Below are positions 19,393-48,122 of a stretch of DNA of 64,000 nucleotides, one piece after another. The notes beneath the pieces were generated by a model. That model was not told the DNA's origin. It did no database searches and was given only the letters and a program-made list of their open reading frames with translations. The DNA lies in assembly GCA_044892505.1 (NCBI GenBank), contig CM097882.1, positions 244,528,001 to 244,592,000 of the forward strand, given 5' to 3'. Within the stretch, counting starts at the first letter, position 1; each line of letters begins with the position of its first letter. A program made the translations under genes and the position numbers. This DNA is from Schmidtea nova (Eukaryota).

Positions 19393-19940
19393 TTATTTGT
19401 AGTTCAACAATACAGAGGGTCGGATTACGTTTAGTAGCTCTTGCTCAGATAGGCCACTGAGCAAGTCTACTTCGATCCCAAGGCTATCTGCGTATGCTCG
19501 TCTTTCCCTACGCTTTTTCGCTCCCAAGCGATTCCGTCTCTTTGTTCGTTTCGAGCCCTCCAGAATTATTGGGGATGTTGTGGTAGTTGTGATTGGGATG
19601 GTTTCTATTTCCGTTTGGGTACTTGTTGTCGTAGATATTGTGTCTACCCACCGATTAATGGTGCTAGCCCGGATCACTGGGCGTAATTGCTCGGTGATGC
19701 CCTCAAGTAATTCGCCAGCTCCATCTTTAGGGCTGCAATCTCTCTGGCATGTTCCTCAGCTACTCGTTCTGCCCTGTATCTAGCCTGCAGGATGGACTTA
19801 ACCTGCTCTGGGTTAAACCATGTAGTCTTAATTCGCTGGTGCTCGTCGTTGAGCTGTCTCAAGCGGTTTTCTAGGACTCGCGATCGTGCTTTATGTTCTT
19901 TGGCCTCTTGTTTGTGGTTCTTAGTTGAATGTTCGCTCAT
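19393..19940 (-). pseudogene. 3' LTR copy of the 187-aa Arg-rich ORF, frameshifted by the 16-bp deletion
   Basis: Split into ORFs 19674-20021 and 19393-19677, versus a continuous ORF in the 5' LTR. Confidence 0.8.
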
Positions 19941-20129
19941 TTCTGAAAAATGTATCATTAATCGGGTTATGTATGGTTTGTCTGTTCTCTCAGTCACTTT
20001 ATTATTAAACAGGTGTTTCACTTTTAGACCACTTCATGCTCACAAAGTCATAACAAAACCCAAAAATTGAATACATTTATTTTTTAACACACATATCCTC
20101 GTTCTTCGAATGATCGACTTCCTTGCGAT

Positions 20130-20765: not shown

Positions 20766-22124
20766 AGTATTTCTAAAGAAAATGGTTGTTTGTTAACTAT
20801 GGATTCTATGGTATAACGGGCCTATTTATATCAGTCAACCCACCCGTTATACTTAATTTTCAACACTCATGTTCAACCACTCAGCTTTAACAGTTTTTAT
20901 TGATCGATAATACTATTTAATCACATTCAATCTCATCAGTCGTTTTCGATTAGTTCCTCATTTAACTAGTAATGATCATGCCATGTCGGGTAATTCTCGT
21001 AAGTTCCTGTGGTCATTGTACACTGGGGTTCATCATTTTATCGGTCCTCAATGCCTGTAATTTGTTTATCATCTCTCCTGGCGACTAAACATAGCTGACA
21101 GAGGTTATCGATTATCCTTAACCATTGATACTAGGTTCACTATGCCCGAACTCGTACGCGCTAAGGTTGACATATACCTACCCTCGTCGTTACCTAATTC
21201 ATAGGCACTAATATTATTCACTACACGTATATCCCTCGTCTAGACCTCGCCACGATATATATCTTTCCCATACCACGGGTTTCTCGTTACGCTCGTTTAC
21301 GACTACTAGTTTATGCTCGATACCCTATCATCGTGATGTATATCGTTTATATTAGATCATCGCTACCTTGATTTCGTTCACAATCATTAGGTCTTACTCG
21401 ATACCCTATGTGCATCCCCTTTTTTCCCCCCACCAAGTATTTAATAAACTTATGGTCCCGCCGCATCAGCACCTCACAACCGAAAGATTGTGTTGCGCTG
21501 AGAGGCCCCAAGAATCCGTCAGGCTGTTAGGCCTCCGGAAAACCTTATTGATTTTAATATGGTTAACAATTATGAGGGTTTATATGAATGATACAAAACA
21601 TAACTCAACCATACCTTTTATTTCCAACTGGTTTCCAATACAAGGTTGTTACAAGTTATCAGTTACAACTTGCACTCGGTAAAAATGACATTACCAAATA
21701 CTGATTTGACTTCAGTATTTATACTCAACCGGTGTTGTTGGTTAGCCAATCAGCATCGAGTATGTGTGTATGTTTGATTCATTATTTTGTGTTGCCGGCT
21801 TTTTGGTGCCTAACTCAACTCAATGATTTATTTGGTTAATCATGCGGTAAGTTTTTCTTAGTCATCAATTTATTTTATTTTATTTTTGTTTTAGGTCTTT
21901 GGTGACATCCGCCCACGCGCTGTCATATTCCAATTTTATCTGCTTCGCATGAGTGAGTTTTGAAGATTTTTGTTGTTTTGATTAATATTTTATTTCTTTT
22001 AGATGTTGCCGCCTATTTTGTTACGCTTTGGTGTTGGTAATTTATTTTGTTGTTATTCTGTATTTAATTTATTTTATTGATTGTACATTATTTTCAGATG
22101 CTGCTCGATTTGGCTGGCCCAACA

Positions 22125-32100: not shown

Positions 32101-35100
32101 CTCAAATGCTGCTTGCTGTTCTGTTCCCCACACAAACGACACGTCTTGTCTTACTAATTCTTGCATTGGCTTTGATATTCCTGCATAGTCCTTGATGAAT
32201 TTTCGATAATATCCACACAATCCCAAAAATTCTTGTATTTGAGTCACTGTCTTTGGTGGTGGACATTCTTTGACTTTTTCGATATTCCTTGGATCTGGTT
32301 CTTTTCCTTTTGCTGATACAATGTGACCTAAAAATGTCACTTTCTCTTTTGCCCAATCGCACTTTGACGGCTTCAATTTCAGTTTCCACTGTCTTAATTT
32401 CACGAACACATTTCTGATGTCTTGTAAGTGATCTTCAAATGTTGCGGAGTAGATCAATAGATCGTCGATATACACCATGCATTGTTTTATGCCATGTGTT
32501 ACGAAATTCATGCATCTCTGGAATGATGCTGGCGCGTTTGTTAACCCAAACGGCATTTTCTTGAATTGGTACAGATCTCGTCCGATTGTAAATGCTGTCT
32601 TTTCTTTATCCTCGTCTTTCATTTTGATCTGCCAATATCCGCTTTTTAAATCTAGTGACGTGAAATAAGCTGCTCCTTGTAACGTCAATAACATTTCGTT
32701 TATATCTGGCAATGGGTACGTATCTCTTTTCGTAACTGCATTCAACCGTCTGTAATCGATACAGAATCTCTGAGTTCCATCCTTCTTTTTTACCATCACC
32801 ACTGGGAATTGCCAGGGTGAGCAACTAGGTTCGATGACCTCTGCATCTAACATTTTTTGTACTTCTTCTTCTGCTACTGCTTTTTGGGCTTCTGCCAATT
32901 TGTATGGTCGTAATGCTATTGGCGTTTCGTCCGTCAACGGTATCGTGTGTAATGTTACATCACATGTTCCCAAATCTAAATCTGATGCTGCAAATATATC
33001 TTTATATTCCATCAACAGTTTCTGTAACTGTTCTTTTTGTCGTTCGTCTAACAACACACTGTCGATTTTCCATGGTAATTCGCCTTTGCCTTTCTCATTC
33101 TTGTCTGGTATTTCGATTTCGGACATTGGTGTCAATTTACCCAATCTCTCATTCTCGTATATTATCTTGTCCTCTTCGTCGAAATTTACCAGATTGATCG
33201 GTATTTCTCCTTCCTGGTTTATCGTAACCAATTCTCTTGCCATTGGTAATTCTTTCTTTGCTTCGAACTTCTTACTTGGTTCGAATATCATATCTCCTTT
33301 TATTGTCGAATCGATCTTGACATAGCACATCATTTCGTGCCTCGCTGGCACTACTATTTGTTCCGCACTTGCCACTTTAACTTTCATTCTGCAGATTTTT
33401 CCTGTCCTATCTTTTAGTTTCATTGCTCCTAGATCAATTACGATTTCCTTGAACAGGTCTGGCATCAGGTCAGTTCCAATAATACATGGTACACTCAGCG
33501 ATGGTATTACAGCGATGTACGTGTTGATCTCTGCACCTCGATGCTTAATTTTTACAAACCATCTTCCGGCTACTTCTACTGTCTCTTGACTGCACGCGAT
33601 TACATGTACATTCGTCTTCTCGATTTCTCCTTGATTTTTCTCTGGTATATAATTAATGTCGATCGCCGAAATATTCGCGCCTGTATCGATCATAGCTTCG
33701 ATTTCTCTTCCATTTATTTCTACGGTTGTTGTTAAAATCGGTCCCATATTTGTGGACATAACCGCTATCGTATGCGTGTCTTTTAACGAGTTTACACTTC
33801 CACCTCGTTTTACTTTGCATCCTTCTGGAATTATCGGGTATATACTTGTCATCGGCATCATCTGCATCATATTCGGCTTCGCTTTGTATATCGGTTCGTT
33901 ATACATTGACTGAGGTGGAGCGCTGTATCTCCAATTCTCAACTGCACTCTTTTCGTTATACTGTGGAATCTGGTTTATATTCGCTTGTCCTCCTCGATCG
34001 TCATCGTCATCATCATCATTGCTTGAGTCATCTTGCGTTCGATATCCTCTCACTCTTTCCCATAATCCTTTCCTTTCTTTCTTTAGTTGTCGCCTTGCTT
34101 GTTCATCTTGCATTATCTTTTTGAATTTCCTTCCGACATCTTCATTTGTTCCTCTCATTTTTGCAAGTATCTTCAACAACCTCTTTATTCGATGTATGTC
34201 TTTTGAGTGTCCGTGTAACACCATCGTTTTCGCAAGGAATGGTAAAAACCCTACTACCATTTTCCAATTCACTTTCTTTTCTCTCTTGTAGATGTCGAAA
34301 CACGCTAACATTTGCGTTATTATCACTCTGACGATTTGTATAATCAATATAACACCCAGTATTCCAGCCATCATTTGTCCAAAGATCAGGAATCTTCCCC
34401 ACATTGCCTTCATCATATTTTCCGTAGCTTTTTTGAAATGTGCCGGTGACAACAGCAGTTCGTAATTCGGTCCTTCTCGATAATCCGTTCCTCCCGTTAT
34501 CGTTACGATATTTGACAGTAATGCTTCTCTTCTTGCCGGGAATAATATATTCTGCCTTGCTGCTTCTAAATCCTTTGGACTATAGATTCCGTTGTTTGAG
34601 ACATCTACGTCACTGAACTGTCTATCCTTTGACAACTGCATTAGCTCAAATTCTCTTGGTGCTAATACTTCAGTTCTTCCTGGGAACATAACCCATTTGC
34701 CATCTGGCTTCTGATAAAGCGGTCCGTACGCGTTACTACAGTTGAATGGATTTGGTTCAAACCCTGGTGGATTGATGATTCTCGTCACCGGTTGAACGTA
34801 TCGTACTTTTCCTTTATAATCGATTTCTAGTTCGTTTGTACATTGTCCAGGTTTCAACTGCGTTGTTGCTGCTAGCGATGCGTGTGTCTTTTCGCAAATG
34901 TATACGTACATTGCTTCTCCGACCACTCTTCCGAAATGTCCTTCTCTCAGTGGTAATAATGGCATCGCGCTATCTGGATTCGTAATCGCTACGGCCAACT
35001 TTGTCTTTAATATTTCCCGATTCAGTATGCAATCGTTATTTATCAGATCATAGTACACTTTTTGCAATGAGGCTTGTCCTCTATGGAATAAGAAATCCAT

Positions 35101-38100
35101 TTTATTATTCACATACAAGTGTAGCTTGATATCCATTGTGTCGATCTTGGGTTTCGCATTCGGCACTTCTTGTTTTGACACGTATATTCCTGGATAGTTT
35201 GTTTCGTATACTGTGGTACTGCACTTAAGGGTTGCTTTCCCTTTTATGAATCTCATGCCCACATCCTGATTTGTGGTTATCAACACTGTAGGTGTGGTTC
35301 TCATCTCTATCCGTTTTTCTCTATGATCTGGCTTCAATTGTCTTTTATTCTCTAACGCTTCTTTGAGATGTTTTGCTCTAGCTTTGTCATCATCGTCTTC
35401 TTCTTGGAATGTTTTCCCTTGAATTTCGTCGAACTTTGCTCCTTGTAGCAGTTGTAATTGACATTCGTTCACTTTTGGTTTATACACCAATGTTGACATT
35501 CCCGTTTGACACATGCTTCTGTCAATTTTACACATGGATAACGTTTTCATTTCTCCTGTTGTTGGTTCGAAGAATGCTTCGTAGCTTTTCAGTTCGACTA
35601 TATACGTATCCATTACCACTAGGTTGGTTGCAGGTACTCCAAATATCGGATAGGTTTCTCCTTGACAATACCCTTCTCCTCCCGTAATTCGTCCTGCTAC
35701 ATAATACGTCTGCTGCAACATCATTCCTGGCTTTCCTTTTATCTTGATTTTATCTCTCGTTGTCACTTCTCCATGCTTGAATAATGCTTCACAGTCTTCT
35801 CCTTGTAACACGATTGGTTCTCTTTCGGTTCCTGGCATGACAATTGCTGAATAATGTCCTCTCCCACAATAGAATGCGAATCTCGTCTTCTGTACCTTGC
35901 ATTCATTCACCATTGTCTTTATTAGTTCTGCCTCTTGATACACGTGATACCATTGTTCCTTTTTGATCTCTTTCAATTCTACTGGAGTTGCATCTTTGCA
36001 CTGCTCCGTACCTCTCAATGAGTACTTTTCTCCCAATTTCATTTGATCACAATCAAATACCTCGAACGTTGTTACACCTTCTGTGCTTAACAACCATACT
36101 AACATCATCATGATTATCGAGTTTAAATTCAACGTCGATCTCCCGTTTCCTTGCATCGTTTGTCTATTCTCCATTTCTCTCAATACTCCTTCGAGTTTCT
36201 TTCTCATAACGTTAGACCCTTCTTTTGTCTGGTTCTCTTTTATGAACTTTTCCCATCCTCCTTTTCTGAGGATATATGGTTCAATTTCCTTCTCGATAAT
36301 CATCGCCGTACTCTTGATATGTCTTCCCATCGGACTTGACTTCGGACTTCCTCGGCTTAGCGTTAGCAAATTGTATATCGTATACGAGATTGCTACTAGA
36401 TATTTGCTATCCGTCTCTGCTCCGTTAAGTAGCCTTTTTACCAACATCGTGGTTCCTTGCCAATCTAGATGATTCGATTTTGTTTTCGCCTTAATCAATT
36501 CTGGCATAATCGGTGCTATTGCATTGTGTAGCATCCTTGCCTTTGTACTAGGTTCGTTTATCCGCCACAAATTCTTTAATTCCGGGTCGATTATCGCTAA
36601 CACATCCATTATCGTTTTGGTGAGCCATTCCTCTCCTTGGCAGACTTGATTCTCCTCCTTGCCTCTGATTTCTGCGATTTTATCTAATTTCTTCAAGCAA
36701 ATCTCCCATTGCTCTTGTCTCCTTTCTTCCCTTGATTTTAGGATTGTTGTTGCTGGATCTGTCTTTGGTCTTCCTCTTGGTCGTTTTTCCATTCCGGTTC
36801 CCGTTTCTACAAATCTCACTGCTCTTCCCGTTTCTTCTGTAACATCTCTTCCTTCGTTCGCTCGCTGTTCTAACCATCTTTCCATTTCTTGAGTAAACTG
36901 GGGTTGTTCTTGCTCGTCTTCCGATTCGTTTACCATTTCTATGACTACCTCCTGTTCCACTCCTTGATCGTCGATTTCTGCTGGTGACGTTATTGGCATC
37001 TCTATTATTCTGTCAAAGATGTTCGCTGTTGGTTTTTGAGTCAACTTCGTTAATTCCTCTATCGCTTCATCACTGTCTGTTAGTATCTCATCTACGTCAT
37101 ACGCTTCTGGCGGTGTTCCCTCTCTGATTTTTACTGGCATTGTCCTTGTTTGTCCCGAACTTGTTCCTGGGGTCATTGTTGACTTCATCGGACTTGGTGT
37201 ACTCATGCTTCCCTTCGCTTTCTTTTCCTCTTTAAACTTCAGTGGTTGACCCACTATCTGTGCCACTGTTAGCGTATTCATTAGATCCAATTGCACTGGT
37301 GTCAGCCAGATTTCCAAACTATTATCCAACGATCGTCCTTGATGTTGCAGGTGGAATGGTAGTTCGTACATCAGTTTCTCTTTAACACTCTTCACTTTTT
37401 CTGTTAGCATCACCCAAAACTCTTCTTTTCTTTGATTCGGATACATTATCCTCAAATGTATTTTCTGTGGCGTTTCCTCCGCAAACTCTTTGTTTCTCCA
37501 CTTTTTTATTACGTCGTCTAGTTGCTCTGGACACCACTCGTTAACTCTCTTGTATTCTGCTATCGCCTTAGCTACTTTTCTCAAGTTCGTTATGTCTTCT
37601 CCATTTGAGATTATGAAACCTGCTAAGCCTTTTATTGTTTGTCTTTTTCCCCGAGTATTTCCTCTCAACCGCTCGATCAATTCACTCGTTTTCTGTTTCT
37701 CCAATTCTGCCCATATTACTGCAGTTTCTGGTCCGTCTAAGTCCGTTGGTAGTAACCTCCTTGTTACCATACATATTCGTTTCGTATTCCGTTCATATCT
37801 GTCTTCTCCTTCCGGATCTTCTTCATACACGCCTCTTTTCACTTTCCAACATTTCTCTTTGTTATCCCATTGTTTCTCTACTGGCGTCAATCGTCGTCTG
37901 TTGAGATCCAATTCTCCCAATATTGTCTCCCATTCTGGCTTCATCTGCCAGTTCCGATAGATTTCTACTATCTGTCTCAGCTTGCGCATAACGTCCTCTT
38001 GTCGTTTCTTTTTCCTTTCCTCATCTCTTGGTGTTGCTCTTGGCACATCATCCATTCTGATGACGTGTATTGTCTGATAATTATCCCATATGCCGATTTT

Positions 38101-41043
38101 GTACGCTCGTCTTTCGTCACGTTCGTTCAGTAGATGTTCTTTGTATTTTATCGCAATGTCATCCTCAAATTCGTCTTCCCGTTCTCGTTGCAATATCTTC
38201 TCGTTGATGACCTCTACTATTTCTCCCACTTTACTATCTGGTATTACCTCAATTTGTCTTGTCTCTTCGTTTGGTAATCTCACGGTAATCTTCAGATCTG
38301 ATACTTCTCCTCGTCTAAACATTTCTTTTCCTATCTTTGCGATTAGCTTGTCCGTTTTGAAATTCGAATGTCTCGTTTGACTTGTATCTCGTATGTTCTC
38401 GATACATTGCTTCAAATTCTCATACTCGCTTTTCGTCAGTTCCTTTCGATGTTTCTTGATTTGTTGGATGATCTGTTCTATCATCGTATTCAAATTCTCT
38501 GCCAAGATTCTTTCTTTTGCCTCTACCAACTGAGGTTTTATTCTCATCTCGTAACACGTATTCGCTTCTTTGATGATTCCTTGTAAGTTCTCTTCCTTCT
38601 TGGTGTTGCATATAGATAACGTTGTTATTTCTCCTGGCCAGATGCCTGTATCTATCATATGCGTTCCCTTTTTCACCAATCCGTTTTCCGAATATATGAA
38701 CTTGTCTTTGTACGAGCTTCCCAATCTGTCCTCAACCCATCTGTAAATTCCATCCGTCATTGGGTTCCTTATCCAGATTCTCGGTGAACACTCGTTTATC
38801 CATATCTGTATTATGTATTCGTTGAGTGGTTCTTTCAATAACTTCTCTATGAACTCTTGTATTACCCTCACTTCTCTTTCTTGTAACCACTCTTTGTACT
38901 TCATTTGCCATACTGCTCGTATAAACTTTCGGTATCGTTTCGTGTCAATAAACTCCTCGTTATGGATTACTTCCAACGCGTTATCCATCAGCTTCTGAAT
39001 TTCGTCTTCCGTTACTGACACTGTTTCCATCGTCTCAACTACTTCCATCTTTTTGTCCTCGTTTTCCGGTTCCTTTAGCATGTCTCCTGCCAGACTGCTA
39101 ACTTCGCTGTTGTCTTCTTCATCTGACAACTCTTGTCTTGGGTGTCTTAGCATCCCAATATGTGCGGTTGGTCTTGTTTCGTTTTTGCTAACTTCTTGTA
39201 TTAGTTCATTCTCGTTTCCTGTTACTTCAGCTTTTCCCATTCTTTTCTCCAACTCCTCTATTTCTTCCAACCGTCTTCGTCTTATTTTTCCCTTGAATAT
39301 TCGACTGATCCGAGTTTGATGTTTCACTGGTGGGGGAATTTTCTCCGGTTCCACCTCTCTGATGATCATCACGTTTATTTTCGTCTCCGTTACTCCCATA
39401 TCTTCCCATATATCGGTCATCTTTAACTTCACTTCTGGCAAATCCTCTGTTTGTAGGAATGCTTCTCTGGGCAGTTTCGTCACTCCCGGAATCATCTCAT
39501 TTACTTTATTGAACAATCTTCCCACTTCTTCTTTTACATCGTATTTGAATCGCCACACGTGATCATTCGGCATGATCACCAACATTCCTCTTTGTTTGAT
39601 TCTCACTTCCTCTTCTTGATTCGTTTCTTTTTCTGTTTCTTTTTCTGTTTCTGTTTCTTTTTCTTCTTCTTCATCTTTTTGATTCTGCTCTGTAGTTTCT
39701 ACTTCCTGACTCACTTCTTCTTGTTTCTGCTCTTCGTTTCTTTTCTCTTTAACTTCTAACTCGTCTGACTCATCCTGCTGCTTCTCTTCCATCATTGCTC
39801 GCATCATGTTGATCCTTGGATTTCCCTTTTTTAACTGTTGTAATCGTTGTTGCCTGACTTGTTCTTCTTCTCGTCGTACTCTAGCCCATTCTTGATTATG
39901 TTTCTGTTGACTCTCTCTGTTTTCTCTTTCGGCCTCAGCTTCTATTAACTGGATCATGTTTATCTTTGGTTGAGCAGCTTGTTGGCTTCCCTTTGCCATG
40001 CTTTCGATTATCTCGTGTAATCTGGATACCTCCTGTCTCAACTTAGCTTCTTTCATACTAGCTTCGTTTGCACTGCTGTTTGGGTTGTTCCGTTGTTGAC
40101 CCTGATTCCCATAGCTTGGTCGATTCCCGTAATTCGGTCTATTTCCACTGTTTGACCAACTTCTCTGTTGATTACAATCTCTTGACATGTGTCCGGTTTT
40201 TCCACATGTGTAACACGTTTTCCCATAACATCGATTTTCTGAGTGACCTTTTTGTCCACACAGTTTACAGGCTACATTCTGGAAACACTCTTGTTGCCAA
40301 TGTCCGTTTTTCCCACACGTCTGACATTGCCTATTCTGCCTGTCATTGTAACTATTTCCTCCATTCGTATTCACCGTAATATATCCGTTATTCTTCCTCG
40401 CTGGCGGTTCTTTGAACAATCTCTGCGAATGGGGAATACTTTGATTCATGTTTCTTTTTCCTTGTTCTTCATCTTCTGTCGTTTTTCCCATTACCGCCGT
40501 AATTCTCATGTCGTTCATTTCCATATGCAATTCGAATAGGTTGGCTGCTTCCAACGCTTCATCTACTGTTTTACATCCTTTGCATCCCACTTGTGCTCTG
40601 ATGTCAGGTCTCCTGAGACCTCGTACGAATAACGCTGTCATCAATTCTTCGTCTACTGGATTTCCTCTGTTAAATGCCAGTTTCGCCAACTTTCTTAATT
40701 CACTTGCGTACACTGCATTTGACTCGTTTCTCCTCTGTTTTCTTGCTGAGAACTCATCAAACGCTTCGTTCAACACTTTATTTATCCCAAACGTCTGTTG
40801 GAAGAACTCCTTGATTGCTTCCCACGTTCTGGGTGGATTACTTCCCGATCTCTTCTCAATATACAGATCCAATGCGCTATCTTTCAAGTATAGCGGGATT
40901 CGATTCGCTAACGTTTCTGCACTCCATCCGCATATATCCACGAATATGCCAAATTCTTTCAGGAACGTGTCCAATCTACTGGCGTCTCCATTAAATGGTT
41001 CGCCCTTGAATTTTTCTCTTAGATCTTCTCTGTGATCACTCAT
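26143..41043 (-). CDS. gag-pol: 4966-aa Gag-accessory-Env-Pol-accessory polyprotein
   Basis: Single open frame with CA-like N-terminus, 3 CCHC knuckles, DTG protease, YIDD RT, RNase H (TDAS), HHCC and DDE integrase, plus extra domains listed separately. Confidence 0.97.
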   Translation of the reverse strand: MSDHREDLREKFKGEPFNGDASRLDTFLKEFGIFVDICGWSAETLANRIPLYLKDSALDLYIEKRSGSNPPRTWEAIKEFFQQTFGINKVLNEAFDEFSARKQRRNESNAVYASELRKLAKLAFNRGNPVDEELMTALFVRGLRRPDIRAQVGCKGCKTVDEALEAANLFELHMEMNDMRITAVMGKTTEDEEQGKRNMNQSIPHSQRLFKEPPARKNNGYITVNTNGGNSYNDRQNRQCQTCGKNGHWQQECFQNVACKLCGQKGHSENRCYGKTCYTCGKTGHMSRDCNQQRSWSNSGNRPNYGNRPSYGNQGQQRNNPNSSANEASMKEAKLRQEVSRLHEIIESMAKGSQQAAQPKINMIQLIEAEAERENRESQQKHNQEWARVRREEEQVRQQRLQQLKKGNPRINMMRAMMEEKQQDESDELEVKEKRNEEQKQEEVSQEVETTEQNQKDEEEEKETETEKETEKETNQEEEVRIKQRGMLVIMPNDHVWRFKYDVKEEVGRLFNKVNEMIPGVTKLPREAFLQTEDLPEVKLKMTDIWEDMGVTETKINVMIIREVEPEKIPPPVKHQTRISRIFKGKIRRRRLEEIEELEKRMGKAEVTGNENELIQEVSKNETRPTAHIGMLRHPRQELSDEEDNSEVSSLAGDMLKEPENEDKKMEVVETMETVSVTEDEIQKLMDNALEVIHNEEFIDTKRYRKFIRAVWQMKYKEWLQEREVRVIQEFIEKLLKEPLNEYIIQIWINECSPRIWIRNPMTDGIYRWVEDRLGSSYKDKFIYSENGLVKKGTHMIDTGIWPGEITTLSICNTKKEENLQGIIKEANTCYEMRIKPQLVEAKERILAENLNTMIEQIIQQIKKHRKELTKSEYENLKQCIENIRDTSQTRHSNFKTDKLIAKIGKEMFRRGEVSDLKITVRLPNEETRQIEVIPDSKVGEIVEVINEKILQREREDEFEDDIAIKYKEHLLNERDERRAYKIGIWDNYQTIHVIRMDDVPRATPRDEERKKKRQEDVMRKLRQIVEIYRNWQMKPEWETILGELDLNRRRLTPVEKQWDNKEKCWKVKRGVYEEDPEGEDRYERNTKRICMVTRRLLPTDLDGPETAVIWAELEKQKTSELIERLRGNTRGKRQTIKGLAGFIISNGEDITNLRKVAKAIAEYKRVNEWCPEQLDDVIKKWRNKEFAEETPQKIHLRIMYPNQRKEEFWVMLTEKVKSVKEKLMYELPFHLQHQGRSLDNSLEIWLTPVQLDLMNTLTVAQIVGQPLKFKEEKKAKGSMSTPSPMKSTMTPGTSSGQTRTMPVKIREGTPPEAYDVDEILTDSDEAIEELTKLTQKPTANIFDRIIEMPITSPAEIDDQGVEQEVVIEMVNESEDEQEQPQFTQEMERWLEQRANEGRDVTEETGRAVRFVETGTGMEKRPRGRPKTDPATTILKSREERRQEQWEICLKKLDKIAEIRGKEENQVCQGEEWLTKTIMDVLAIIDPELKNLWRINEPSTKARMLHNAIAPIMPELIKAKTKSNHLDWQGTTMLVKRLLNGAETDSKYLVAISYTIYNLLTLSRGSPKSSPMGRHIKSTAMIIEKEIEPYILRKGGWEKFIKENQTKEGSNVMRKKLEGVLREMENRQTMQGNGRSTLNLNSIIMMMLVWLLSTEGVTTFEVFDCDQMKLGEKYSLRGTEQCKDATPVELKEIKKEQWYHVYQEAELIKTMVNECKVQKTRFAFYCGRGHYSAIVMPGTEREPIVLQGEDCEALFKHGEVTTRDKIKIKGKPGMMLQQTYYVAGRITGGEGYCQGETYPIFGVPATNLVVMDTYIVELKSYEAFFEPTTGEMKTLSMCKIDRSMCQTGMSTLVYKPKVNECQLQLLQGAKFDEIQGKTFQEEDDDDKARAKHLKEALENKRQLKPDHREKRIEMRTTPTVLITTNQDVGMRFIKGKATLKCSTTVYETNYPGIYVSKQEVPNAKPKIDTMDIKLHLYVNNKMDFLFHRGQASLQKVYYDLINNDCILNREILKTKLAVAITNPDSAMPLLPLREGHFGRVVGEAMYVYICEKTHASLAATTQLKPGQCTNELEIDYKGKVRYVQPVTRIINPPGFEPNPFNCSNAYGPLYQKPDGKWVMFPGRTEVLAPREFELMQLSKDRQFSDVDVSNNGIYSPKDLEAARQNILFPARREALLSNIVTITGGTDYREGPNYELLLSPAHFKKATENMMKAMWGRFLIFGQMMAGILGVILIIQIVRVIITQMLACFDIYKREKKVNWKMVVGFLPFLAKTMVLHGHSKDIHRIKRLLKILAKMRGTNEDVGRKFKKIMQDEQARRQLKKERKGLWERVRGYRTQDDSSNDDDDDDDRGGQANINQIPQYNEKSAVENWRYSAPPQSMYNEPIYKAKPNMMQMMPMTSIYPIIPEGCKVKRGGSVNSLKDTHTIAVMSTNMGPILTTTVEINGREIEAMIDTGANISAIDINYIPEKNQGEIEKTNVHVIACSQETVEVAGRWFVKIKHRGAEINTYIAVIPSLSVPCIIGTDLMPDLFKEIVIDLGAMKLKDRTGKICRMKVKVASAEQIVVPARHEMMCYVKIDSTIKGDMIFEPSKKFEAKKELPMARELVTINQEGEIPINLVNFDEEDKIIYENERLGKLTPMSEIEIPDKNEKGKGELPWKIDSVLLDERQKEQLQKLLMEYKDIFAASDLDLGTCDVTLHTIPLTDETPIALRPYKLAEAQKAVAEEEVQKMLDAEVIEPSCSPWQFPVVMVKKKDGTQRFCIDYRRLNAVTKRDTYPLPDINEMLLTLQGAAYFTSLDLKSGYWQIKMKDEDKEKTAFTIGRDLYQFKKMPFGLTNAPASFQRCMNFVTHGIKQCMVYIDDLLIYSATFEDHLQDIRNVFVKLRQWKLKLKPSKCDWAKEKVTFLGHIVSAKGKEPDPRNIEKVKECPPPKTVTQIQEFLGLCGYYRKFIKDYAGISKPMQELVRQDVSFVWGTEQQAAFETLRDKLITAPILVHPDFKKPFLLATDASGYAAGAVLGQFDEEGKERVIGYYSRTFRKHERNYSVTEREAYAIILAIKHFKYLLWGHEIYITTDHQPLVWLGQHKESSSRLMRWAMQLQEYSPFIKFKAGKANANADCMSRFIFPELVNLNALKICALIAEDLDFSELRKDQLGDEELGLISQYLKEKEIEIFGKNQVLREHMQKYQHRYVMEKGWLLIQDGERRLMCLPANRRKEIMTQYHDGKLGGHMSVKKTIGRLRQKYFWPTMEDDVKEWIKNCLTCATRKNVGTKWKTPLKPMPIPAEPMATIAMDVVGPLPESLKGNQYILVVTDYLTKFPEAFAIPDQKAKTVARILVEEICCRYGTPKKILTDQGTNFMSEILDEVTNYFRIAKLRTSPYHPQTNGQTERFNGTLIRMLSNYVSKHQTDWDEYINLCLMAYRMSIHAATKLSPFQLMYGRDCNLPIDLEYQPPLSQYMEVDDYVTKFKERMQEIWKTAELNIKFYQESYKDLHDQKKNVKAHDLKVGDWVIIETPEIIPGTVKKLQRPGKGPYEITTVNENNVRVRLVNNPLVRPIYVNACRCRKIPKTVTLLPEKRVMTRSQTARISMLRVQQKPQTSLEDNRREIIDIKELAKKTREIIPEWKWWHDFNILSEVRKNVMDYAKDRTAHPITRTLLEEIPQTLNLQDKDGNTALHNAIKHSGNEKVKEIVEMILEGGGEIDKVNWEGITPLMMMTIHGRNDEIIKLFGNTRSNWLTKDKEGRTFLNHAIDRANHRILKYITENATWEINELTRGSIMKQAIGVKNSKTWRILLKWKRPEGDSWVIDCNEVFTRGENALLKHLLEVTYDPKTLAVLVARDTLRVSENPREYKLEDRKKELFGLIKKWCDKQWNPDMSFEHFYDIQKQHKEISKRYKELVEALKYGQFFRQAVYQDQRMKQMQTRIRSKAVLFNAKADYQERLNAIVAKAQEKLSEFKENKNSLEILGTITEKVHRYAEGDYNESDIETIKNQMPVAFLLSKDGRLPIHWALRRKKENEVLEITKAMVKCEADMNTADDNGDTIMIIAARKKTNCKVLNELYEAGAKIEGKNGKNNSIIDIAIQWNNFEMIKFIKSIKKQDDIEYLANNVKNFSLTVMIHDIEKTRALLTWVNPVTKEPAFKINDHMEQNQNWCIRSALLRHKKPEIVEEFLKRRDLKFTNNSKEQERIGRWKDLFRKYVKEWANAKETIKQSRLKDIEPSKDMEIREFESSTLAVQAYERLIEEINVEDDISKGPGGGYRDFDDKSDSKKEDNKDNNEDNEKERQEEPKPTRNDKKGEAEERENSGTEDEHANYGKRTGSLLLRPEMLCIAILITIIGQGEAKKQYVTLEIIRGNEVYERICWKENLKKNDTLKCILSDLKRDVIQIKGLEKEKSYIICAIKQRGEPKAPQVTACQLYKATEALKIQKWIEKRSKETTRRTEVESEKGKNQTEAEEGIRNRTEKERITKNPAGKLTFQPELICVALILILIKRIMEDIDISVMTLVNIQDQRTTNGRCWGRNNEVIGISETRESREAETNEEIEITEMETEKTCELCLMEKAANGNRPGTSECKVFQAKEIIEFPKRKKQDQETIANEVVTVEIKNIGRRTIGMCWRKYIGIPTNNIIPQCRTRERGIPFQLNGFEVGQAYEICVIRRIREIIQRSLECKLYQTPEQINGTRTIEMGRSRQRKRKSRRTTTTNSQRTQQATTERTTIENEPESTTLIIWKIHKKVLEICWTLMPNSMRESPRNCQKTSNDKRETIEVEMRRLKTNAEYEVCAIEEVDAQGNQQERCETYYTPRNITIKGGTRKLEFRELSQKREQNEKEETIPNRQEKWEPEKVIEEVRRRQQQYEQWEAEWKGQYGVMINQSETPRMSIGKTVMGLISMGVFIACIPLITIMIVCWRYGMRNKTIAVKWPDVKVTNYNIKLSKEVREELKRRSKHEEMWVQIEDEELYEGKPVVIV
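26330..28068 (-). other. C-terminal membrane module: two signal/TM-like segments, about four FN3-like repeats, final TM
   Basis: IKGLEKEKSYIICA, ITEMETEKTCELC, LNGFEVGQAYEICV, MRRLKTNAEYEVCA match the FN3 L-x-x-L-x4-Y-x-V strand; TM VMGLISMGVFIACIPLITIMIVCW. Confidence 0.6.
28765..30054 (-). other. Two clusters of about three ankyrin repeats (29760-30054 and 28765-29052)
   Basis: DKDGNTALHNA, NWEGITPLMM, DKEGRTFLNHA; KDGRLPIHWA, DDNGDTIMIIAA, GKNNSIIDIA. Confidence 0.88.
30400..31400 (-). other. Integrase (HHCC, DDE, GPY/F)
   Basis: HDGKLGGH..CLTC; MDVVGPLP; TDQGTNF; HPQTNGQTERFN; GPYEI. Confidence 0.96.
31680..32060 (-). other. RNase H
   Basis: LATDASG, YSVTEREA, TDHQPL, NANADCMSR. Confidence 0.95.
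32310..32970 (-). other. Reverse transcriptase
   Basis: SPWQFPVV, RFCIDYRRLN, LDLKSGYWQI, MPFGLTNAPASFQR, YIDD (32461-32472). Confidence 0.97.
33400..33740 (-). other. Aspartic protease
   Basis: EINGREIEAMIDTGANIS (DTG at 33679-33687), IIGTDL. Confidence 0.93.
34200..36120 (-). other. Envelope glycoprotein (chuvirus G / herpes gB-type class III fusogen-like) in the polyprotein
   Basis: Internal signal-like SIIMMMLVWLLS; FDC...YSL...C start; Cys-rich ectodomain with CILNREILKTKLA, GEAMYVYIC, CTNELEIDYKG..YVQPVTRII, C..AYGPLY..W; TM at 34297-34392. Confidence 0.8.
36238..36708 (-). other. Bcl-2-like domain in the polyprotein
   Basis: Multi-helical region ending in BH2-like PYILRKGGWEKF; BH1-like DWQG is weak. 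Confidence 0.7.
37249..37461 (-). other. Ubiquitin/SUMO-like domain 2 in the polyprotein
   Basis: IHLRIMYPNQRKEEFWV..TEKVKSVKEKL..FHLQHQGRSLDNS..L..MNTLTV. Confidence 0.55.
38053..38295 (-). other. Ubiquitin-like domain 1 in the polyprotein
   Basis: LKITVRLPNEETRQIEVIPDSKVGEI...IAIKYKEHLL..GIWDNYQTIHVI follows a beta-grasp pattern. Confidence 0.6.
40174..41043 (-). other. Gag capsid plus three CX2CX4HX4C zinc knuckles
   Basis: PFNGD..FL..F; W..IKEFF..TF; KQRRNES..Y; LFVRGL; CQTCGKNGHWQQEC, CKLCGQKGHSENRC, CYTCGKTGHMSRDC. Confidence 0.93.
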
Positions 41044-41917
41044 CCCGATTCCACTATCTTGGAATGCTGTACTAGTTTTCTTTACTTCTAGTTCACCACT
41101 TGTTTCTGAATTCGACTCTTCTTCTTCGCTACTCTCTGTTTCGTTATCTCTTGATTCGCTTCTTGTTCTGTTTTCCCTGACTAGTTCACTGTCTATCGTC
41201 TCTACTTCGTTTTGTACTTCTAGATCTTCTGGGGTTTCTTCTTGATTCTCTTTATTACTCGAATTATCGCTGATCTCTACTTGTTTGTTCTTTTGTTGCT
41301 TAGGCTTGTTACCTGTTCTTGTCCTTTTCGCTGCTTTTCTTTCTGCTTCCGTTAAGATTGGTATTATACCTGATCTTGTTTCTCGTCCCTCAATTTTGTC
41401 TATTCCTCAACTGCTTATATTCTCAACTGCTTTTCTACTCCGCTTTTGCTTTGCTTCTTCTTTGATTTGTTTCTTTTGATTGCTCTGACTGCTAGATTGC
41501 TTTGAATTGCTTGATTGATTTGTTTCCTTAAAACAAATAATCACTTACACGATACGTCCCCGTTATCGTGTTTCTCGTCCCTCTCACGGGTGTAGTCATA
41601 ATTCATGAAGATCCCCATTTTTCAAATTTCCCTTGATTTTAAGTCTATTTAAATTATCTATGCAGTCGCATCAATTATCTATTCTTTATCAAATACACCA
41701 ATTACTTTTCCCCAGTTCCCCAATTACTTTGTCGCTCAGCGCTCTTATTATCCCCTTTACTTTTCTCAGGCTTCTCTGGCTCTGAGTTCAAATTTCCCCT
41801 TATCTGTCGACTACTCTGTTTCTCGACTATTCGCTTTATCTCCTATTCACACTACGTTTACTACTTCATTTCAATTCTCATCTCTACTCACCTTTAATTC
41901 GACTGACATCTCTCGTT

Positions 41918-42384
41918 GGCCTGCTGGGCTTTCCAGTCAGCGCCTTTCATCTCACCTTTTATCTCGACTTTATTACTCTCAACATCACTCATTATCTCAT
42001 TAGCCTGCTGGGTTTTCCAGTCAGCGCTTTTAATCTCACCTTTTATTGTTATCTCGTTACTCTCGACCACGACTGTCGTTTCATTAGCCTGCTGGGTTTT
42101 CCAGTCAGCGCTCTTGTTATCCTCCATTTATCTCTTTACTGTCGACTTTTAACTGCTCTTGACTCCGATGATCATCACTTTTGACCTGCTGGGTCTTCCA
42201 GTCAGCGTCCTCACTTTCACCACTTTATTATTACTCACTTTTATTCTCTCGATCTTTCCTGATCGTTATCATTGACCTGCTGGGTTTTCCAGCTAGCGTC
42301 TTTACCACTTTACCTGTCTTAACAAACCGGTTTTATTTTACTCTCTTCGAATCTCATGGTCTGCTGGTTTTTCCAGTCAGCACC
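41918..42384 (-). ncRNA. Array of six 27-nt bulged stem-loops (putative cis-acting RNA element)
   Basis: Copies at 41918, 42002, 42086, 42183, 42274 and 42358; consensus NNN-G-CTG-A-CTGG-(5-nt loop)-CCAG-CAG-NNN with covarying basal stems. Confidence 0.7.
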
Positions 42385-42710
42385 CTTCACTTACTCACTT
42401 TACTTTGCTACTCCTCCTTGTATGCATACTTTAACATCATTAGGCCACATAATCAGCTTTACTCGCATTTATCAATACCCAGGTGCGCACCTTCAACTCT
42501 CTCATTATTACCTCGGTTTCTTTCAACCCTTATTCCTCATTATTCGCTATTCATTTTCACTATTCATCATTTATCCTCATTATTATTTATTCATCTCCAT
42601 TATCGCTTGTTGATCTTCACTATCCGGATAGTTTTATACTTTATTTAGTCCTCATCTGCCTCACTTCGTCGTCTTTCTCGTGGGCTTTTACTCAATATTT
42701 TATTTCGAAC

Positions 42711-43270
42711 GAGAACTATGCTCACAGCTGAGAACTATGCTCACTAACGAGAACTATGCTCAATGACGAGAACTATGCTCAATGACGAGAACTATGCTCA
42801 CTGACGAGAACTATGCTCACTGACGAGAACTATGCTCACTGACGAGAACTATGCTCACTGACGAGAACTATGCTCACTAACGAGAACTATGCTCACTGAC
42901 GAGAACTATGCTCACTGACGAGAACTATGCTCACGGGCAAAACATGGTTGTTATGAGGGTTTTGCTTACTGATGGAAACTCTTTGCTCCGGGGACTATGT
43001 TCCCCGATGAGAACTATGCTCACTGATGGTGACTACAGGAATTATGTTTCCTGATGAGAACTACGCTCACTACGATGACTATGCTTATTGATGAGAACTA
43101 CGCTCACTGATGAGGACTATGTTCGCTGGTCTTGTGTTTATTAATGAGAACTCTGCTCACTACGAGAACTATGCTCACTATGATGTTGTGTTTTTATGAC
43201 GAGACCTATGCTCACTAGGATGTTATTTTTATGACGAGACCTATGCTCACTATGAGACCTATGCTCACGA
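42711..43270. repeat. 19-bp tandem array (GAGAACTATGCTCACTGAC): 12 copies at 42711-42934, degenerate copies to about 43270
   Basis: Read directly. Confidence 0.95.
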
Positions 43271-43967: not shown

Positions 43968-44426
43968 TTACAAGTACACTGTTATTCTTTCGGATACGGT
44001 AAGGTTGCACATAGGACATCGTTCATTTATTTTACAGTCATTACAGAATCGAAAATGCCCACATGGCAACAACATTATCTGTATTTTGTTCATTTCACAG
44101 ATATAACACGTCAGATATTGTCTCGTATGTTCTGTTGTTATTCTTATCCATTCATCGTGTTTTGTTGTTAACTGTTGTTCTAGCCTGTGGCACTCGATAT
44201 TCATCTCAGGGTTGCTTAATCTTTCTCTATACCATTGATATCGTGTTGTTGTATCCACTGTTATCTTATTCTCGCTTATGCTCATCATCATGTCGGCTCT
44301 TTCTGTGTTGTTTGTCGGTTCGTGATATTCTCCTACCTCGAGTCGTCTTAACTTCCTCATTATTGTCTCCACTGTTTCGTTGTTTGTTTCGAAAAACGTT
44401 TGCATTTCTTTTATTTTGTTCTCCAT
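43968..44426 (-). CDS. 152-aa protein with C-terminal IAP-type C3HC4 RING (putative E3 ligase)
   Basis: CYICEMNKIQIMLLPCGHFRFCNDC..CPMCNLTVSERITVYL at the extreme C-terminus; no BIR domain. Confidence 0.9.
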   Translation of the reverse strand: MENKIKEMQTFFETNNETVETIMRKLRRLEVGEYHEPTNNTERADMMMSISENKITVDTTTRYQWYRERLSNPEMNIECHRLEQQLTTKHDEWIRITTEHTRQYLTCYICEMNKIQIMLLPCGHFRFCNDCKINERCPMCNLTVSERITVYL

Positions 44427-44960: not shown

Positions 44961-44979
44961 AATCCCGGCTGAGCCCCCA
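44961..44979 (-). promoter_or_regulatory. Primer-binding site, tRNA-Pro type
   Basis: TGGGGGCTCAGCCGGGATT, 6 nt after the 5' LTR; two mismatches to the MLV Pro PBS TGGGGGCTCGTCCGGGAT. Confidence 0.85.
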
Positions 44980-45369
44980 AATTTATGCTGGTGTGTTGGT
45001 TAGATTGACAACTGAGATCCTTATGATTTTATACGTTAGGGTGATCTCGCCAACATAAAAACATTCCCCCGCTGACACCCATGATGTATCCCTAACTACT
45101 CATCATGTTGGTGCTGTGTCAACGTTGTGAAATGACAAGGCAGGTGAGCAACCTTTCGGCTACTATTCCCTTGTTTATTCACGGGTCCACCACTACCGTT
45201 AGAAGGTGTCTGTGGCTTTCTTTCGGTCCCACTTATGCTCTTTTCTTTTGTCCTAGGGTAATTTACATTTTAGATATCTGCAGCTTTAAATGAACCAGGT
45301 TTTCATTACCTTTAATTCTCATACATACTTCAACAAACAAGACAAATCAAATCATTCATTTATATACAT

Positions 45370-45933
45370 TTATTTGTAGTTCAACAATACAGAGGGTCGG
45401 ATTACGTTTAGTAGCTCTTGCTCAGATAGGCCACTGAGCAAGTCTACTTCGATCCCAAGGCTATCTGCGTATGCTCGTCTTTCCCTACGCTTTTTCGCTC
45501 CCAAGCGATTCCGTCTCTTTGTTCGTTTCGAGCCCTCCAGAATTATTGGGGATGTTGTGGTAGTTGTGATTGGGATGGTTTCTATTTCCGTTTGGGTACT
45601 TGTTGTCGTAGATATTGTGTCTACCCACCGATTAAAGGTGCTAGCCCGGATCACTGGGCGTAATTGCTCGGTGATGAACTCCTTGGTTGATGCCCTCAAG
45701 TAATTCGCCAGCTCCATCTTTAGGGCTGCAATCTCTCTGGCATGTTCCTCAGCTACTCGTTCTGCCCTGTATCTAGCCTGCAGGATGGACTTAACCTGCT
45801 CTGGGTTAAACCATGTAGTCTTAATTCGCTGGTGCTCGTCGTTGAGCTGTCTCAAGCGGTTTTCTAGGACTCGCGATCGTGCTTTATGTTCTTTGGCCTC
45901 TTGTTTGTGGTTCTTAGTTGAATGTTCGCTCAT
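45370..45933 (-). CDS. LTR-encoded 187-aa protein (coiled coil, Thr-rich linker, Arg-rich motif, Leu-rich tail)
   Basis: Start chosen at TTTTTCAG|AAATG rather than the tracked GTG at 46014; KRTKRRNRLGAKKRRERRA; stop overlaps AATAAA. Confidence 0.7.
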   Translation of the reverse strand: MSEHSTKNHKQEAKEHKARSRVLENRLRQLNDEHQRIKTTWFNPEQVKSILQARYRAERVAEEHAREIAALKMELANYLRASTKEFITEQLRPVIRASTFNRWVDTISTTTSTQTEIETIPITTTTTSPIILEGSKRTKRRNRLGAKKRRERRAYADSLGIEVDLLSGLSEQELLNVIRPSVLLNYK

Positions 45934-46122
45934 TTCTGAAAAATGTATCATTAATCGGGTTATGTATGGTTTGTCTGTTCTCTCAGTCACTTTATTATTA
46001 AACAGGTGTTTCACTTTTAGACCACTTCATGCTCACAAAGTCATAACAAAACCCAAAAATTGAATACATTTATTTTTTAACACACATATCCTCGTTCTTC
46101 GAATGATCGACTTCCTTGCGAT

Positions 46123-46758
46123 TTAGAGGAAGGGTCTTAATTCCTGATCGCTGGTATTCTCGTCGCGACGGATTCCATTCTCCCAATACATTTCTGGGGC
46201 TGGGTTCCAACTCAGCTTGTCTTTGTAGATAAACACCTCCCAGAGGCGAAGCTCCTTGGGCTCGGGGTGTTGTTCCACGGAAACACTTCCTGGCGCATTG
46301 GAATAAGCGAAGACTTCCTCAGTGTAGCGACACCGAGGCCTGTCTAGCAGCGTGTATCCGAGTTTGTGTAGCTCTTTTCCGGTCATCGTTCCGGTACTTA
46401 GCAGCCAGCGGGGTTGCTGTAACTCATCGCAGAATTGATAGAACCATCGGGGGTTCTCCGGCTTACTATGATCCGAGGAGAGTACCCAATCAGTATCCCC
46501 TTCCCACCGCAGCTGTAGTCCAAACGCGCAAGCTGGGGTGTTAGCCGCTAAGCTCATATGGGCCCTCATCCACCGTCGTAGGTGGCGACGTGATATTTCT
46601 GTCACCTTTCGAGGTGCTTCGTTTTCTCCTCTGACGTTTATGATCGTATTGTGTCGGATGACGGAGCGGGTGCGCCGTTTCTTACGAAGGATGGTTTCCT
46701 CTAGCTTTATCGGGTGCGCGATCATCGACTTCCTTTGGAGATTCTCTAGTTTCACCAT
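46123..46758 (-). CDS. LTR-encoded 211-aa protein of unknown function
   Basis: Open in both LTRs; TTTTCTTTAG 7 nt upstream, TATAAATA 58 nt upstream, AATAAA about 50 nt downstream. Confidence 0.65.
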   Translation of the reverse strand: MVKLENLQRKSMIAHPIKLEETILRKKRRTRSVIRHNTIINVRGENEAPRKVTEISRRHLRRWMRAHMSLAANTPACAFGLQLRWEGDTDWVLSSDHSKPENPRWFYQFCDELQQPRWLLSTGTMTGKELHKLGYTLLDRPRCRYTEEVFAYSNAPGSVSVEQHPEPKELRLWEVFIYKDKLSWNPAPEMYWENGIRRDENTSDQELRPFL

Positions 46759-47674
46759 AGTATTTCTAAAGAAAATGGTTGTTTGTTAACTATGGATTCT
46801 ATGGTATAACGGGCCTATTTATATCAGTCAACCCACCCGTTATACTTAATTTTCAACACTCATGTTCAACCACTCAGCTTTAACAGTTTTTATTGATCGA
46901 TAATACTATTTAATCACATTCAATCTCATCAGTCGTTTTCGATTAGTTCCTCATTTAACTAGTAATGATCATGCCATGTCGGGTAATTCTCGTAAGTTCC
47001 TGTGGTCATTGTACACTGGGGTTCATCATTTTATCGGTCCTCAATGCCTGTAATTTGTTTATCATCTCTCCTGGCGACTAAACATAGCTGACAGAGGTTA
47101 TCGATTATCCTTAACCATTGATACTAGGTTCACTATGCCCGAACTCGTACGCGCTAAGGTTGACATATACCTACCCTCGTCGTTACCTAATTCATAGGCA
47201 CTAATATTATTCACTACACGTATATCCCTCGTCTAGACCTCGCCACGATATATATCTTTCCCATACCACGGGTTTCTCGTTACGCTCGTTTACGACTACT
47301 AGTTTATGCTCGATACCCTATCATCGTGATGTATATCGTTTATATTAGATCATCGCTACCTTGATTTCGTTCACAATCATTAGGTCTTACTCGATACCCT
47401 ATGTGCATCCCCTTTTTTCCCCCCACCAAGTATTTAATAAACTTATGGTCCCGCCGCATCAGCACCTCACAACCGAAAGATTGTGTTGCGCTGAGAGGCC
47501 CCAAGAATCCGTCAGGCTGTTAGGCCTCCGGAAAACCTTATTGATTTTAATATGGTTAACAATTATGAGGGTTTATATGAATGATACAAAACATAACTCA
47601 ACCATACCTTTTATTTCCAACTGGTTTCCAATACAAGGTTGTTAGAAGTTATCAGTTACAACTTGCACTCGGTA

Positions 47675-47750
47675 AAAATGACATTACCAAATACTGATTT
47701 GACTTCAGTATTTATACTCAACCGGTGTTGTTGGTTAGCCAATCAGCATC
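47675..47750 (-). promoter_or_regulatory. Candidate LTR core promoter
   Basis: TATAAATA on minus (47709-47716), CCAAT box AGCCAATCAG (47737-47746), Inr-like TCAGT/TCATT downstream. Confidence 0.45.
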
Positions 47751-48122
47751 GAGTATGTGTGTATGTTTGATTCATTATTTTGTGTTGCCGGCTTTTTGGT
47801 GCCTAACTCAACTCAATGATTTATTTGGTTAATCATGCGGTAAGTTTTTCTTAGTCATCAATTTATTTTATTTTATTTTTGTTTTAGGTCTTTGGTGACA
47901 TCCGCCCACGCGCTGTCATATTCCAATTTTATCTGCTTCGCATGAGTGAGTTTTGAAGATTTTTGTTGTTTTGATTAATATTTTATTTCTTTTAGATGTT
48001 GCCGCCTATTTTGTTACGCTTTGGTGTTGGTAATTTATTTTGTTGTTATTCTGTATTTAATTTATTTTATTGATTGTACATTATTTTCAGATGCTGCTCG
48101 ATTTGGCTGGCCCAACATATAT

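What the first reader, a model, noticed from the sequence alone, without database searches (positions are those of the whole stretch)
41918..42384. Six bulged hairpins with compensatory base changes in the leader upstream of gag
Seen: six 27-nt copies spaced 84, 84, 97, 91 and 84 nt apart with dissimilar spacers. On the sense strand each folds as 3-bp stem, bulged G, CTG/CAG, bulged A, CTGG/CCAG, 5-nt loop. The basal stem covaries (GGC/GCC, AGC/GCT twice, GAC/GTC twice, GGT/ACC) and loops vary (AAAGC, AAAAC, AAGAC, AAAAA). The 42274 copy shifts the bulged A by one position yet keeps pairing. The copies do not share a reading frame, so the constraint is structural. Inference: a multivalent protein-binding RNA element (packaging signal, or TAR/RRE/MS2-like operator array). 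All pairs are Watson-Crick, so the functional strand is assumed.
Basis: partly seen in the sequence, partly recalled or inferred. Interest (0 to 1): 0.9.

Follow-up and report, generated by a model that had tools for sequence, protein, structure and literature searches.

The report
Six-hairpin array in retroelement leader
A young, intact 29-kb virus-like LTR element carries, upstream of its giant gag-pol gene, six copies of a small bulged hairpin whose base pairs have been kept by matching double mutations, which marks it as a selected structured RNA signal, most likely a multi-site protein docking platform on the genomic RNA.

Summary
Six 27-nt units lie at 41918-42384, spaced 84, 84, 97, 91 and 84 nt. 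All fold as 3 bp, bulge, 3 bp, bulge, 4 bp and a 5-nt loop, alone and in context. Every stem change is compensated: three basal pairs switch on both sides, and one copy shifts a bulge by a two-base swap. Units stay 83% alike, while spacers are near random similarity. No Rfam family matches, and no further copy exists in the window.

The context needs correcting. The array sits on the minus (sense) strand of a 29-kb Ty3/gypsy-like element. That element has 3.1-kb near-identical LTRs and a 4966-aa open reading frame. The 3.9-kb "leader" also holds a small RING-finger gene. The array lies just upstream of a 553-nt ATG-free stretch that precedes the gag start.

Best reading: a multivalent hairpin array on the full-length RNA, displaying unpaired purines, most likely for Gag nucleocapsid recognition (packaging). 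An RNA export platform is the main rival. It is not a member of TAR, RRE or any curated family. Function and the working strand are inferred, not shown. Covariation across relatives was not tested; that step was referred.

The parts
41918..42384 (-). Whole array: six 27-nt bulged hairpins separated by C-poor, purine-rich spacers (sense strand)
41918..41944 (-). Hairpin 1 (last on the sense strand), basal stem GGC/GCC, dG -13.3
42002..42028 (-). Hairpin 2, basal stem AGC/GCT, dG -11.6
42086..42112 (-). Hairpin 3, identical to hairpin 2
42183..42209 (-). Hairpin 4, basal stem GAC/GTC, dG -11.2
42274..42300 (-). Hairpin 5, basal stem GAC/GTC, second bulge shifted by one position, 10 pairs kept
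42358..42384 (-). Hairpin 6 (first on the sense strand), basal stem GGT/ACC, all-A loop, dG -10.8
44986..48117 (-). 5' LTR (TG...CA); 4-bp target duplication TATA outside it
44961..44979 (-). Primer-binding-site-like stretch beginning TGG a few bases after the 5' LTR (no tRNA at hand to test it)
43968..44426 (-). 152-aa RING-finger ORF inside the so-called leader
   Evidence: zf-C3HC4_3, E 7e-9
42709..42934 (-). 19-nt tandem array, 12 copies, upstream of the hairpins on the sense strand; no excess structure
41044..41596 (-). 553-nt stretch without any ATG directly before the start codon of the giant ORF
26143..41043 (-). Intact 4966-aa ORF: three CCHC knuckles, rhabdovirus-G-like fusion glycoprotein domain, protease, RT, RNase H, integrase, ankyrin repeats
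19009..22124 (-). 3' LTR; differs from the 5' LTR by 3 mismatches and one 16-nt gap

Best explanation
The six units are RNA hairpins on the sense, full-length genomic transcript of a giant Ty3/gypsy-like LTR element. Each is a rigid 10-bp helix that displays an invariant bulged G, a bulged A and an A-rich pentaloop. The hairpins are held apart by purine-rich, C-poor spacers that cannot compete for pairing, like beads on a string. I infer that the array is a multivalent docking platform for a protein. The most likely partner is the nucleocapsid part of the element's own Gag, which has three CCHC knuckles, so the array would mark the full-length RNA for packaging. Shown: the repeats, the fold, the compensated changes and the far slower change of units than of spacers. 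Inferred: the RNA level, the sense strand, protein binding and the packaging role. Layered confidence: selected base-paired element about 0.8; protein-binding RNA array about 0.6; packaging signal about 0.4.
For: All six fold identically, alone and in context. Mean pairing probability is 0.72 for unit positions against 0.34 for spacers. Four compensated double changes occur and no uncompensated stem change. Strict Watson-Crick retention has p about 1e-6 under random transitions. Units are 83% alike, spacers 60%, against a 53% random baseline; spacers hold 6% C. Six of only 19 comparably stable 27-nt hairpins in the 29-kb element are these. The array lies between the PBS-like site and the gag-like start. 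The N-terminal part of the ORF has three CCHC knuckles. On the sense strand 6-7 of the 7 unpaired residues per unit are purines. This matches the rule that retroviral NC prefers unpaired purines presented by structured RNA (PMC13736810). The leader holds 98 ATGs, but the last 553 nt before the start codon hold none. This suggests that the translated mRNA lacks the array while the full-length RNA keeps it, the arrangement by which retroviral packaging signals separate genomic from other RNAs (PMC13736810). Repeated stem-loops with a shared unpaired motif act as a packaging signal in alphaviruses (PMC6283419).
Against: No binding, expression or probing data exist. Every pair is Watson-Crick with no G-U among 60 cells, so the strand is not settled by the pairs. 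Only one element copy with a leader is in the window, so all covariation is among paralogous units of one element. No splice site or transcription start has been mapped. The loops lack the unpaired G that many NC sites use; only the bulged G is constant.
Confidence: 0.4

Rival explanations
1. Nuclear export or expression platform. The hairpins would recruit several copies of an export adaptor, host or element-encoded, so that the very long unspliced RNA leaves the nucleus. This resembles Rev multimerising on its response element, or the Mason-Pfizer monkey virus structure that binds NXF1.
For: The structural evidence is the same as for the best explanation. Retroelements must overcome nuclear retention of unspliced genomic RNA, and Cer1 uses a dedicated protein for this (PMC10309623). 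Two single-base bulges three pairs apart distort a helix in a way that basic peptides can read (inference). The LTRs hold ORFs with arginine-rich runs.
Against: No Rfam export element matches. The 211-aa LTR ORF has one distant homologue only, and the 94-aa ORF has only sub-threshold Pfam hits, so no adaptor is established. Known response elements are single branched structures, not spaced identical hairpins.
Confidence: 0.2
2. DNA-level protein-binding sites. The six motifs would be an enhancer or insulator cluster in the integrated element, acting on an internal promoter near the ATG-free stretch. The cluster of Su(Hw) sites in the 5' region of Drosophila gypsy works in this way.
For: Repeated about 27-bp motifs lie 0.3-0.8 kb upstream of a stretch that looks like a scanning 5' UTR. 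All pairs are Watson-Crick, so the motif is equally a DNA inverted repeat. The gypsy insulator is a precedent for repeated sites in this part of an element (PMC2493044, PMC5416891).
Against: A duplex site gives no reason for complementary double changes. The two arms differ by two conserved extra bases, so the half-sites are not symmetric. Spacing of 84-97 bp has no constant helical phase. As single-stranded DNA the hairpins are only -5.6 to -6.9 kcal/mol. The Su(Hw) consensus is a non-palindromic compound motif.
Confidence: 0.12
3. Another RNA-level role for the same hairpins: transport or localisation of the RNA in germline cells, or control of translation (shunting or internal entry past the ATG-rich leader).
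For: The leader has 98 ATGs, so ordinary scanning from the cap cannot reach the start codon. Long structured leaders with shunting are known in pararetroviruses (PMC5902531, listed).
Against: The array ends 875 nt before the start codon and about 320 nt before the ATG-free stretch. Six identical small hairpins are not the architecture of known shunt or entry structures. No family matches.
Confidence: 0.1
4. No function: a decaying 84-nt minisatellite whose palindromic core looks conserved by chance, or is kept complementary by template switching within the inverted repeat during copying.
For: Units 1-3 still show an 84-nt tandem repeat at 77% matches. Two pairs of units share their basal variant, so only about four independent events exist.
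Against: Units are far better kept than spacers. Random change would rarely leave all stems intact. Arm-to-arm copying would also erase the two bulges, yet these are kept in all six.
Confidence: 0.05

Closest known systems
Retroviral and LTR-retroelement packaging signals (Psi)
   Same: They lie between the primer binding site and gag. They are stable stem-loops that present unpaired purines to the zinc-knuckle nucleocapsid, and several retroviruses have multiple Gag binding sites (PMC13736810).
   Different: Here six near-identical hairpins are spaced 84-97 nt apart, 2.6 kb from the LTR and 0.9-1.3 kb from the start codon. There is no dimerisation palindrome in the loops, no match to any curated Psi model, and binding is untested.
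Alphavirus packaging signal
   Same: Several repeated stem-loops spread over about 400 nt, each showing the same unpaired motif, read by the capsid protein (PMC6283419).
   Different: That signal lies in coding sequence of a plus-strand RNA virus and has a different unpaired motif. There is no homology.
Rev-response-type elements and the constitutive transport element
   Same: Structured RNA on the unspliced genome that binds several copies of an export factor (PMC10309623 and references there).
   Different: Those are single branched or extended structures, usually further 3'. No Rfam match was found here, and no adaptor is established.
Single-hairpin coat-protein operators of RNA phages (MS2, PP7) and the artificial arrays made from them
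   Same: A short hairpin with a bulged purine and a small loop; the spaced repetition resembles the engineered tagging arrays.
   Different: The natural operators are single copies in phage genomes with different stem, bulge and loop geometry. This resemblance is from my own knowledge and was not tested beyond the blank Rfam search.
Su(Hw) site cluster (insulator) of Drosophila gypsy
   Same: Repeated short motifs with dissimilar spacers in the transcribed, untranslated 5' part of a Ty3/gypsy element with an envelope gene.
   Different: That cluster works as duplex DNA with a non-palindromic consensus (PMC5416891). Here the motif is a bulged inverted repeat with compensatory changes.

Membership tests
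Retroelement packaging signal (Psi) | Lies on the full-length RNA between primer binding site and gag start | tested here: met
   The array is 2.6 kb after the 5' LTR and PBS-like site, and 875-1341 nt before the start codon
Retroelement packaging signal (Psi) | Stable stem-loops presenting unpaired purines | tested here: met
   dG -10.8 to -13.3; 6-7 of 7 unpaired residues are purines on the sense strand
Retroelement packaging signal (Psi) | Present on genomic RNA but absent or refolded in other viral RNAs | not testable with these tools
   The only hint is the ATG-free 553 nt downstream of the array
Retroelement packaging signal (Psi) | Bound specifically by Gag or nucleocapsid | not testable with these tools
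   Three CCHC knuckles exist in the ORF; there are no binding data
HIV-type TAR | Hairpin at the very 5' end of all transcripts (R region) | tested here: not met
   The array lies about 2.6 kb downstream of the LTR end; no Rfam match
Rev/Rex-type response element or CTE | Match to a curated model of such an element | tested here: not met
   Nothing with E up to 1 over the leader and LTR; only chance-level hits with E up to 10 over the array
Rev/Rex-type response element or CTE | Element-encoded arginine-rich adaptor | tested here: inconclusive
   LTR ORFs carry Arg-rich runs, but have one distant homologue only and no Pfam family
RNA-phage coat-protein operator | Single operator hairpin in a phage genome at the replicase start | tested here: not met
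   The context is a eukaryotic LTR element, there are six copies, and Rfam gives no match
gypsy-type Su(Hw) insulator | Non-palindromic compound DNA consensus read by a zinc-finger protein | tested here: not met
   The motif here is a bulged inverted repeat with compensated pairs; the consensus described in PMC5416891 is of another kind
Ty3/gypsy (Metaviridae-like) LTR element, for the host element | LTRs with TG...CA ends, target duplication, and the order PR-RT-RNase H-IN | tested here: met

The most novel reading that the evidence does not exclude
The array is a natural operator array. Six equivalent hairpins would each seat one or more copies of the element's own capsid-forming protein and together nucleate assembly on a 26-kb genomic RNA. 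That would be packaging-signal-mediated assembly, known from small RNA viruses, evolved independently in a giant envelope-bearing Ty3/gypsy element of an animal.
Probability: 0.25. Interest if true: 0.8.

Novelty: new variant of a known kind. Interest (0 to 1): 0.6.

Why it matters
Cis-acting RNA signals of LTR retrotransposons outside yeast and vertebrate retroviruses are almost unknown, and none is described as a spaced array of identical hairpins. If the reading holds, this element gives a clean, modular example of how a very long retroelement RNA is marked as 'genome'. The number of sites could then be compared across relatives. It would also give a sequence and structure tag for finding members of a little-known family of giant, envelope-carrying elements in animal genomes.

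Tried and rejected
- **Rfam:** searched over the leader plus LTR, and again over the array alone at E up to 10. Nothing credible came back.
- **Covariance model:** built from the six units and run over the whole window with filters off. It found only the six, and the next best hit scored 13 bits.
- **Second copy:** a diverged copy of the element lies at the left edge of the window, but it is cut before its leader, so it adds nothing on the hairpins.
- **Host identity:** hAT transposase homologues are all from animals, but the 91% hit is unnamed. The TRAF-like ORF has two weak unnamed hits. Polyprotein relatives with the same domain order are unnamed metagenome proteins at 42-45% identity.
- **Candidate partner:** the LTR ORF has one distant hit.
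- **Plus-strand ORF 42181-42648 over units 4-6:** no family; I take it for a by-product of the stop-poor pyrimidine strand.
- **19-nt tandem array:** no excess structure.
- **Not done:** The N run 58431-58563 was left alone. No contig looked human.
- **Consensus lines:** The consensus lines that the alignment and tandem-repeat tools print were not used.

Full report
**Observation**

Spacing is 84, 84, 97, 91 and 84 nt. A degenerate core pattern finds these six and nothing else in 64 kb, against 0.04 expected.

On the minus strand each unit folds into a 10-bp helix broken by two single-base bulges and closed by a 5-nt loop, at -10.8 to -13.3 kcal/mol. The unit at 42274 carries its second bulge one position earlier and still makes ten pairs. 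In the 541-nt context all six hairpins appear in the minimum-energy and centroid structures of either strand. Unit positions have a mean pairing probability of 0.72 against 0.34 for spacers.

**Is it more than chance?**

- The three basal pairs each switch on both sides in one or two units, and no pair changes on one side only. Paired cells are 98.3%, against 12-45% when the 3' partners are slid.
- The two-base swap in the fifth unit is a fourth compensated event. The only uncompensated changes are three loop positions.
- I started from real copies and placed the observed numbers of differences as random transitions. The joint chance of keeping ten canonical pairs is about 0.004. The chance of keeping the energy is about 3e-4, and of staying strictly Watson-Crick about 1e-6.
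- Units are 83% alike pairwise. Spacers are 60% alike, barely above the 53% of shuffled spacers.
- Only 19 places in the 29-kb element hold a 27-nt hairpin this stable, and six of them are these.

The caveat is that all this is covariation among paralogous units of one element, with about four independent events.

**Context**

The array lies on the sense (minus) strand of an LTR element.

- The LTRs are 44986-48117 and 19009-22124. They have TG...CA ends, differ by 3 mismatches and one 16-nt gap, and are flanked by a TATA duplication.
- A PBS-like stretch follows the 5' LTR.
- A single intact ORF of 4966 aa (41043 down to 26143) encodes three CCHC knuckles, a rhabdovirus-G-like fusion glycoprotein domain, protease, RT, RNase H, integrase and ankyrin repeats.
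- Between LTR and ORF lie 3940 nt. This is not a bare leader: it holds a 152-aa RING-finger ORF, a 19-nt tandem array without excess structure, and then the hairpins.
- The leader has 98 ATGs, yet the last 553 nt before the start codon have none. About 10 are expected from composition, and 553-nt windows of the element average 13.
- The array therefore sits just upstream of what looks like a scanning 5' UTR.

The sense strand of the leader is 40% A and 25% G. The spacers have only 6% C, so the hairpins are the only parts able to pair well.

**What it is not**

No Rfam family matches, either at E up to 1 over the leader and LTR or credibly at E up to 10 over the array. A covariance model of the six units finds no further copy in the window. 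The array is not at the 5' end of the transcript, so it is not a TAR. It is not a branched response element. The reading frames are closed.

**Mechanism**

Compensated pairs call for a base-paired single strand. A duplex binding site gives no reason for them, and the two arms are not symmetric because of the conserved bulges. As DNA the hairpins are about half as stable. Transcription from the LTR makes the minus strand the RNA strand. On that strand 6-7 of the 7 unpaired residues per unit are purines. This is the feature that retroviral nucleocapsid domains prefer (PMC13736810).

Six equal sites held apart by non-pairing spacers suggest multivalent binding. Repeated stem-loops with a shared unpaired motif serve as a packaging signal in alphaviruses (PMC6283419). 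I therefore put a Gag and nucleocapsid docking array that marks the full-length RNA first, at 0.4.

The rivals are:

- An export platform, by analogy with Rev-type systems and with the Cer1 export protein (PMC10309623): 0.2. No adaptor is established, because the Arg-rich LTR ORF has a single distant homologue.
- A DNA-level enhancer or insulator like the gypsy Su(Hw) cluster: 0.12.
- Localisation or translation control: 0.1.
- A functionless minisatellite: 0.05.

The absence of any G-U pair leaves the strand formally open.

**Relatives**

The window's second copy of the family spans outer bounds 4-9063 on the + strand. It is about 73% identical in protein over residues 1281-3769 of the polyprotein, and is cut by the window edge before its leader. 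Its polyprotein region is broken by 2 frame changes, 6 in-frame stops and at least one insertion.

Proteins with the same glycoprotein-PR-RT-IN order exist in unnamed metagenome assemblies at 42-45% identity. Envelope-carrying Ty3/gypsy elements with class III fusogens are known in animals (PMC13524379).

Because the element looks like an intact provirus-like element of an animal, I did not fetch DNA of relatives by pattern or look-up. That step is referred.

**Housekeeping**

The N run 58431-58563 was left as it is. 

Two slips are declared. First, I recalled from memory a few short motif strings of known elements while reasoning; I used them nowhere. Second, one search printed block bounds for the degraded copy.

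**Verdict**

The array is a new variant of a known kind (cis-acting structured RNA in a retroelement leader), of moderate to high interest. Its function is still inferred.

Noticed in passing
window 26143-41043 (-): One uninterrupted 4966-aa ORF joins gag-like zinc knuckles, a rhabdovirus-G-like fusion glycoprotein domain (placed between gag and protease), PR, RT, RNase H, IN, ankyrin repeats and a long tail. An envelope-like domain inside the polyprotein is unusual.
   Followed up: partly
window 43968-44426 (-): A 152-aa RING-finger ORF lies between the primer-binding-site-like stretch and the hairpin array, so the 'leader' is not purely non-coding.
   Followed up: partly
window 24167-25579 (-): A TRAF-like ORF (RING, TRAF zinc finger, MATH) lies downstream of the polyprotein. 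It has only two weak homologues among 5.8 billion proteins. It is followed by a 386-aa coiled-coil ORF and a 171-aa membrane-anchored ORF with a sub-threshold gp41 hit.
   Followed up: partly
window 41044-41596 (-): A 553-nt stretch with no ATG lies directly before the start codon, in a leader that otherwise has 98 ATGs. It hints at an internal start or a splice acceptor for the translated mRNA.
   Followed up: partly
window 42709-42934 (-), weaker copies up to about 43255: A 19-nt tandem repeat has 12 copies at 94% matches. Its predicted structure is no better than that of shuffles.
   Followed up: yes
window 19009-22124 and 44986-48117 (-): The LTRs are 3.1 kb long and carry ORFs of 94-211 aa with arginine-rich runs. 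The 211-aa ORF has one distant hit, to eight repeated stretches of a 4696-aa protein (P0243).
   Followed up: partly
window 4-9063 (+): A second, diverged copy of the same family is about 73% identical and is cut by the window edge. Its polyprotein region is broken by 2 frame changes, 6 in-frame stops and at least one insertion.
   Followed up: partly
window 13175-15724 (-) and 16951-17415 (-): There is an intact 849-aa hAT transposase (DUF4371 plus hAT dimerisation domain) with a 91% unnamed homologue, and a pogo-like DDE fragment next to it.
   Followed up: partly
window 54269-58952 and 62789-63287: Very AT-rich satellite arrays (14-23% G+C) have units of roughly 200-240 nt and 163 nt. The first array encloses the N run 58431-58563, which was left untouched.
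   Followed up: no
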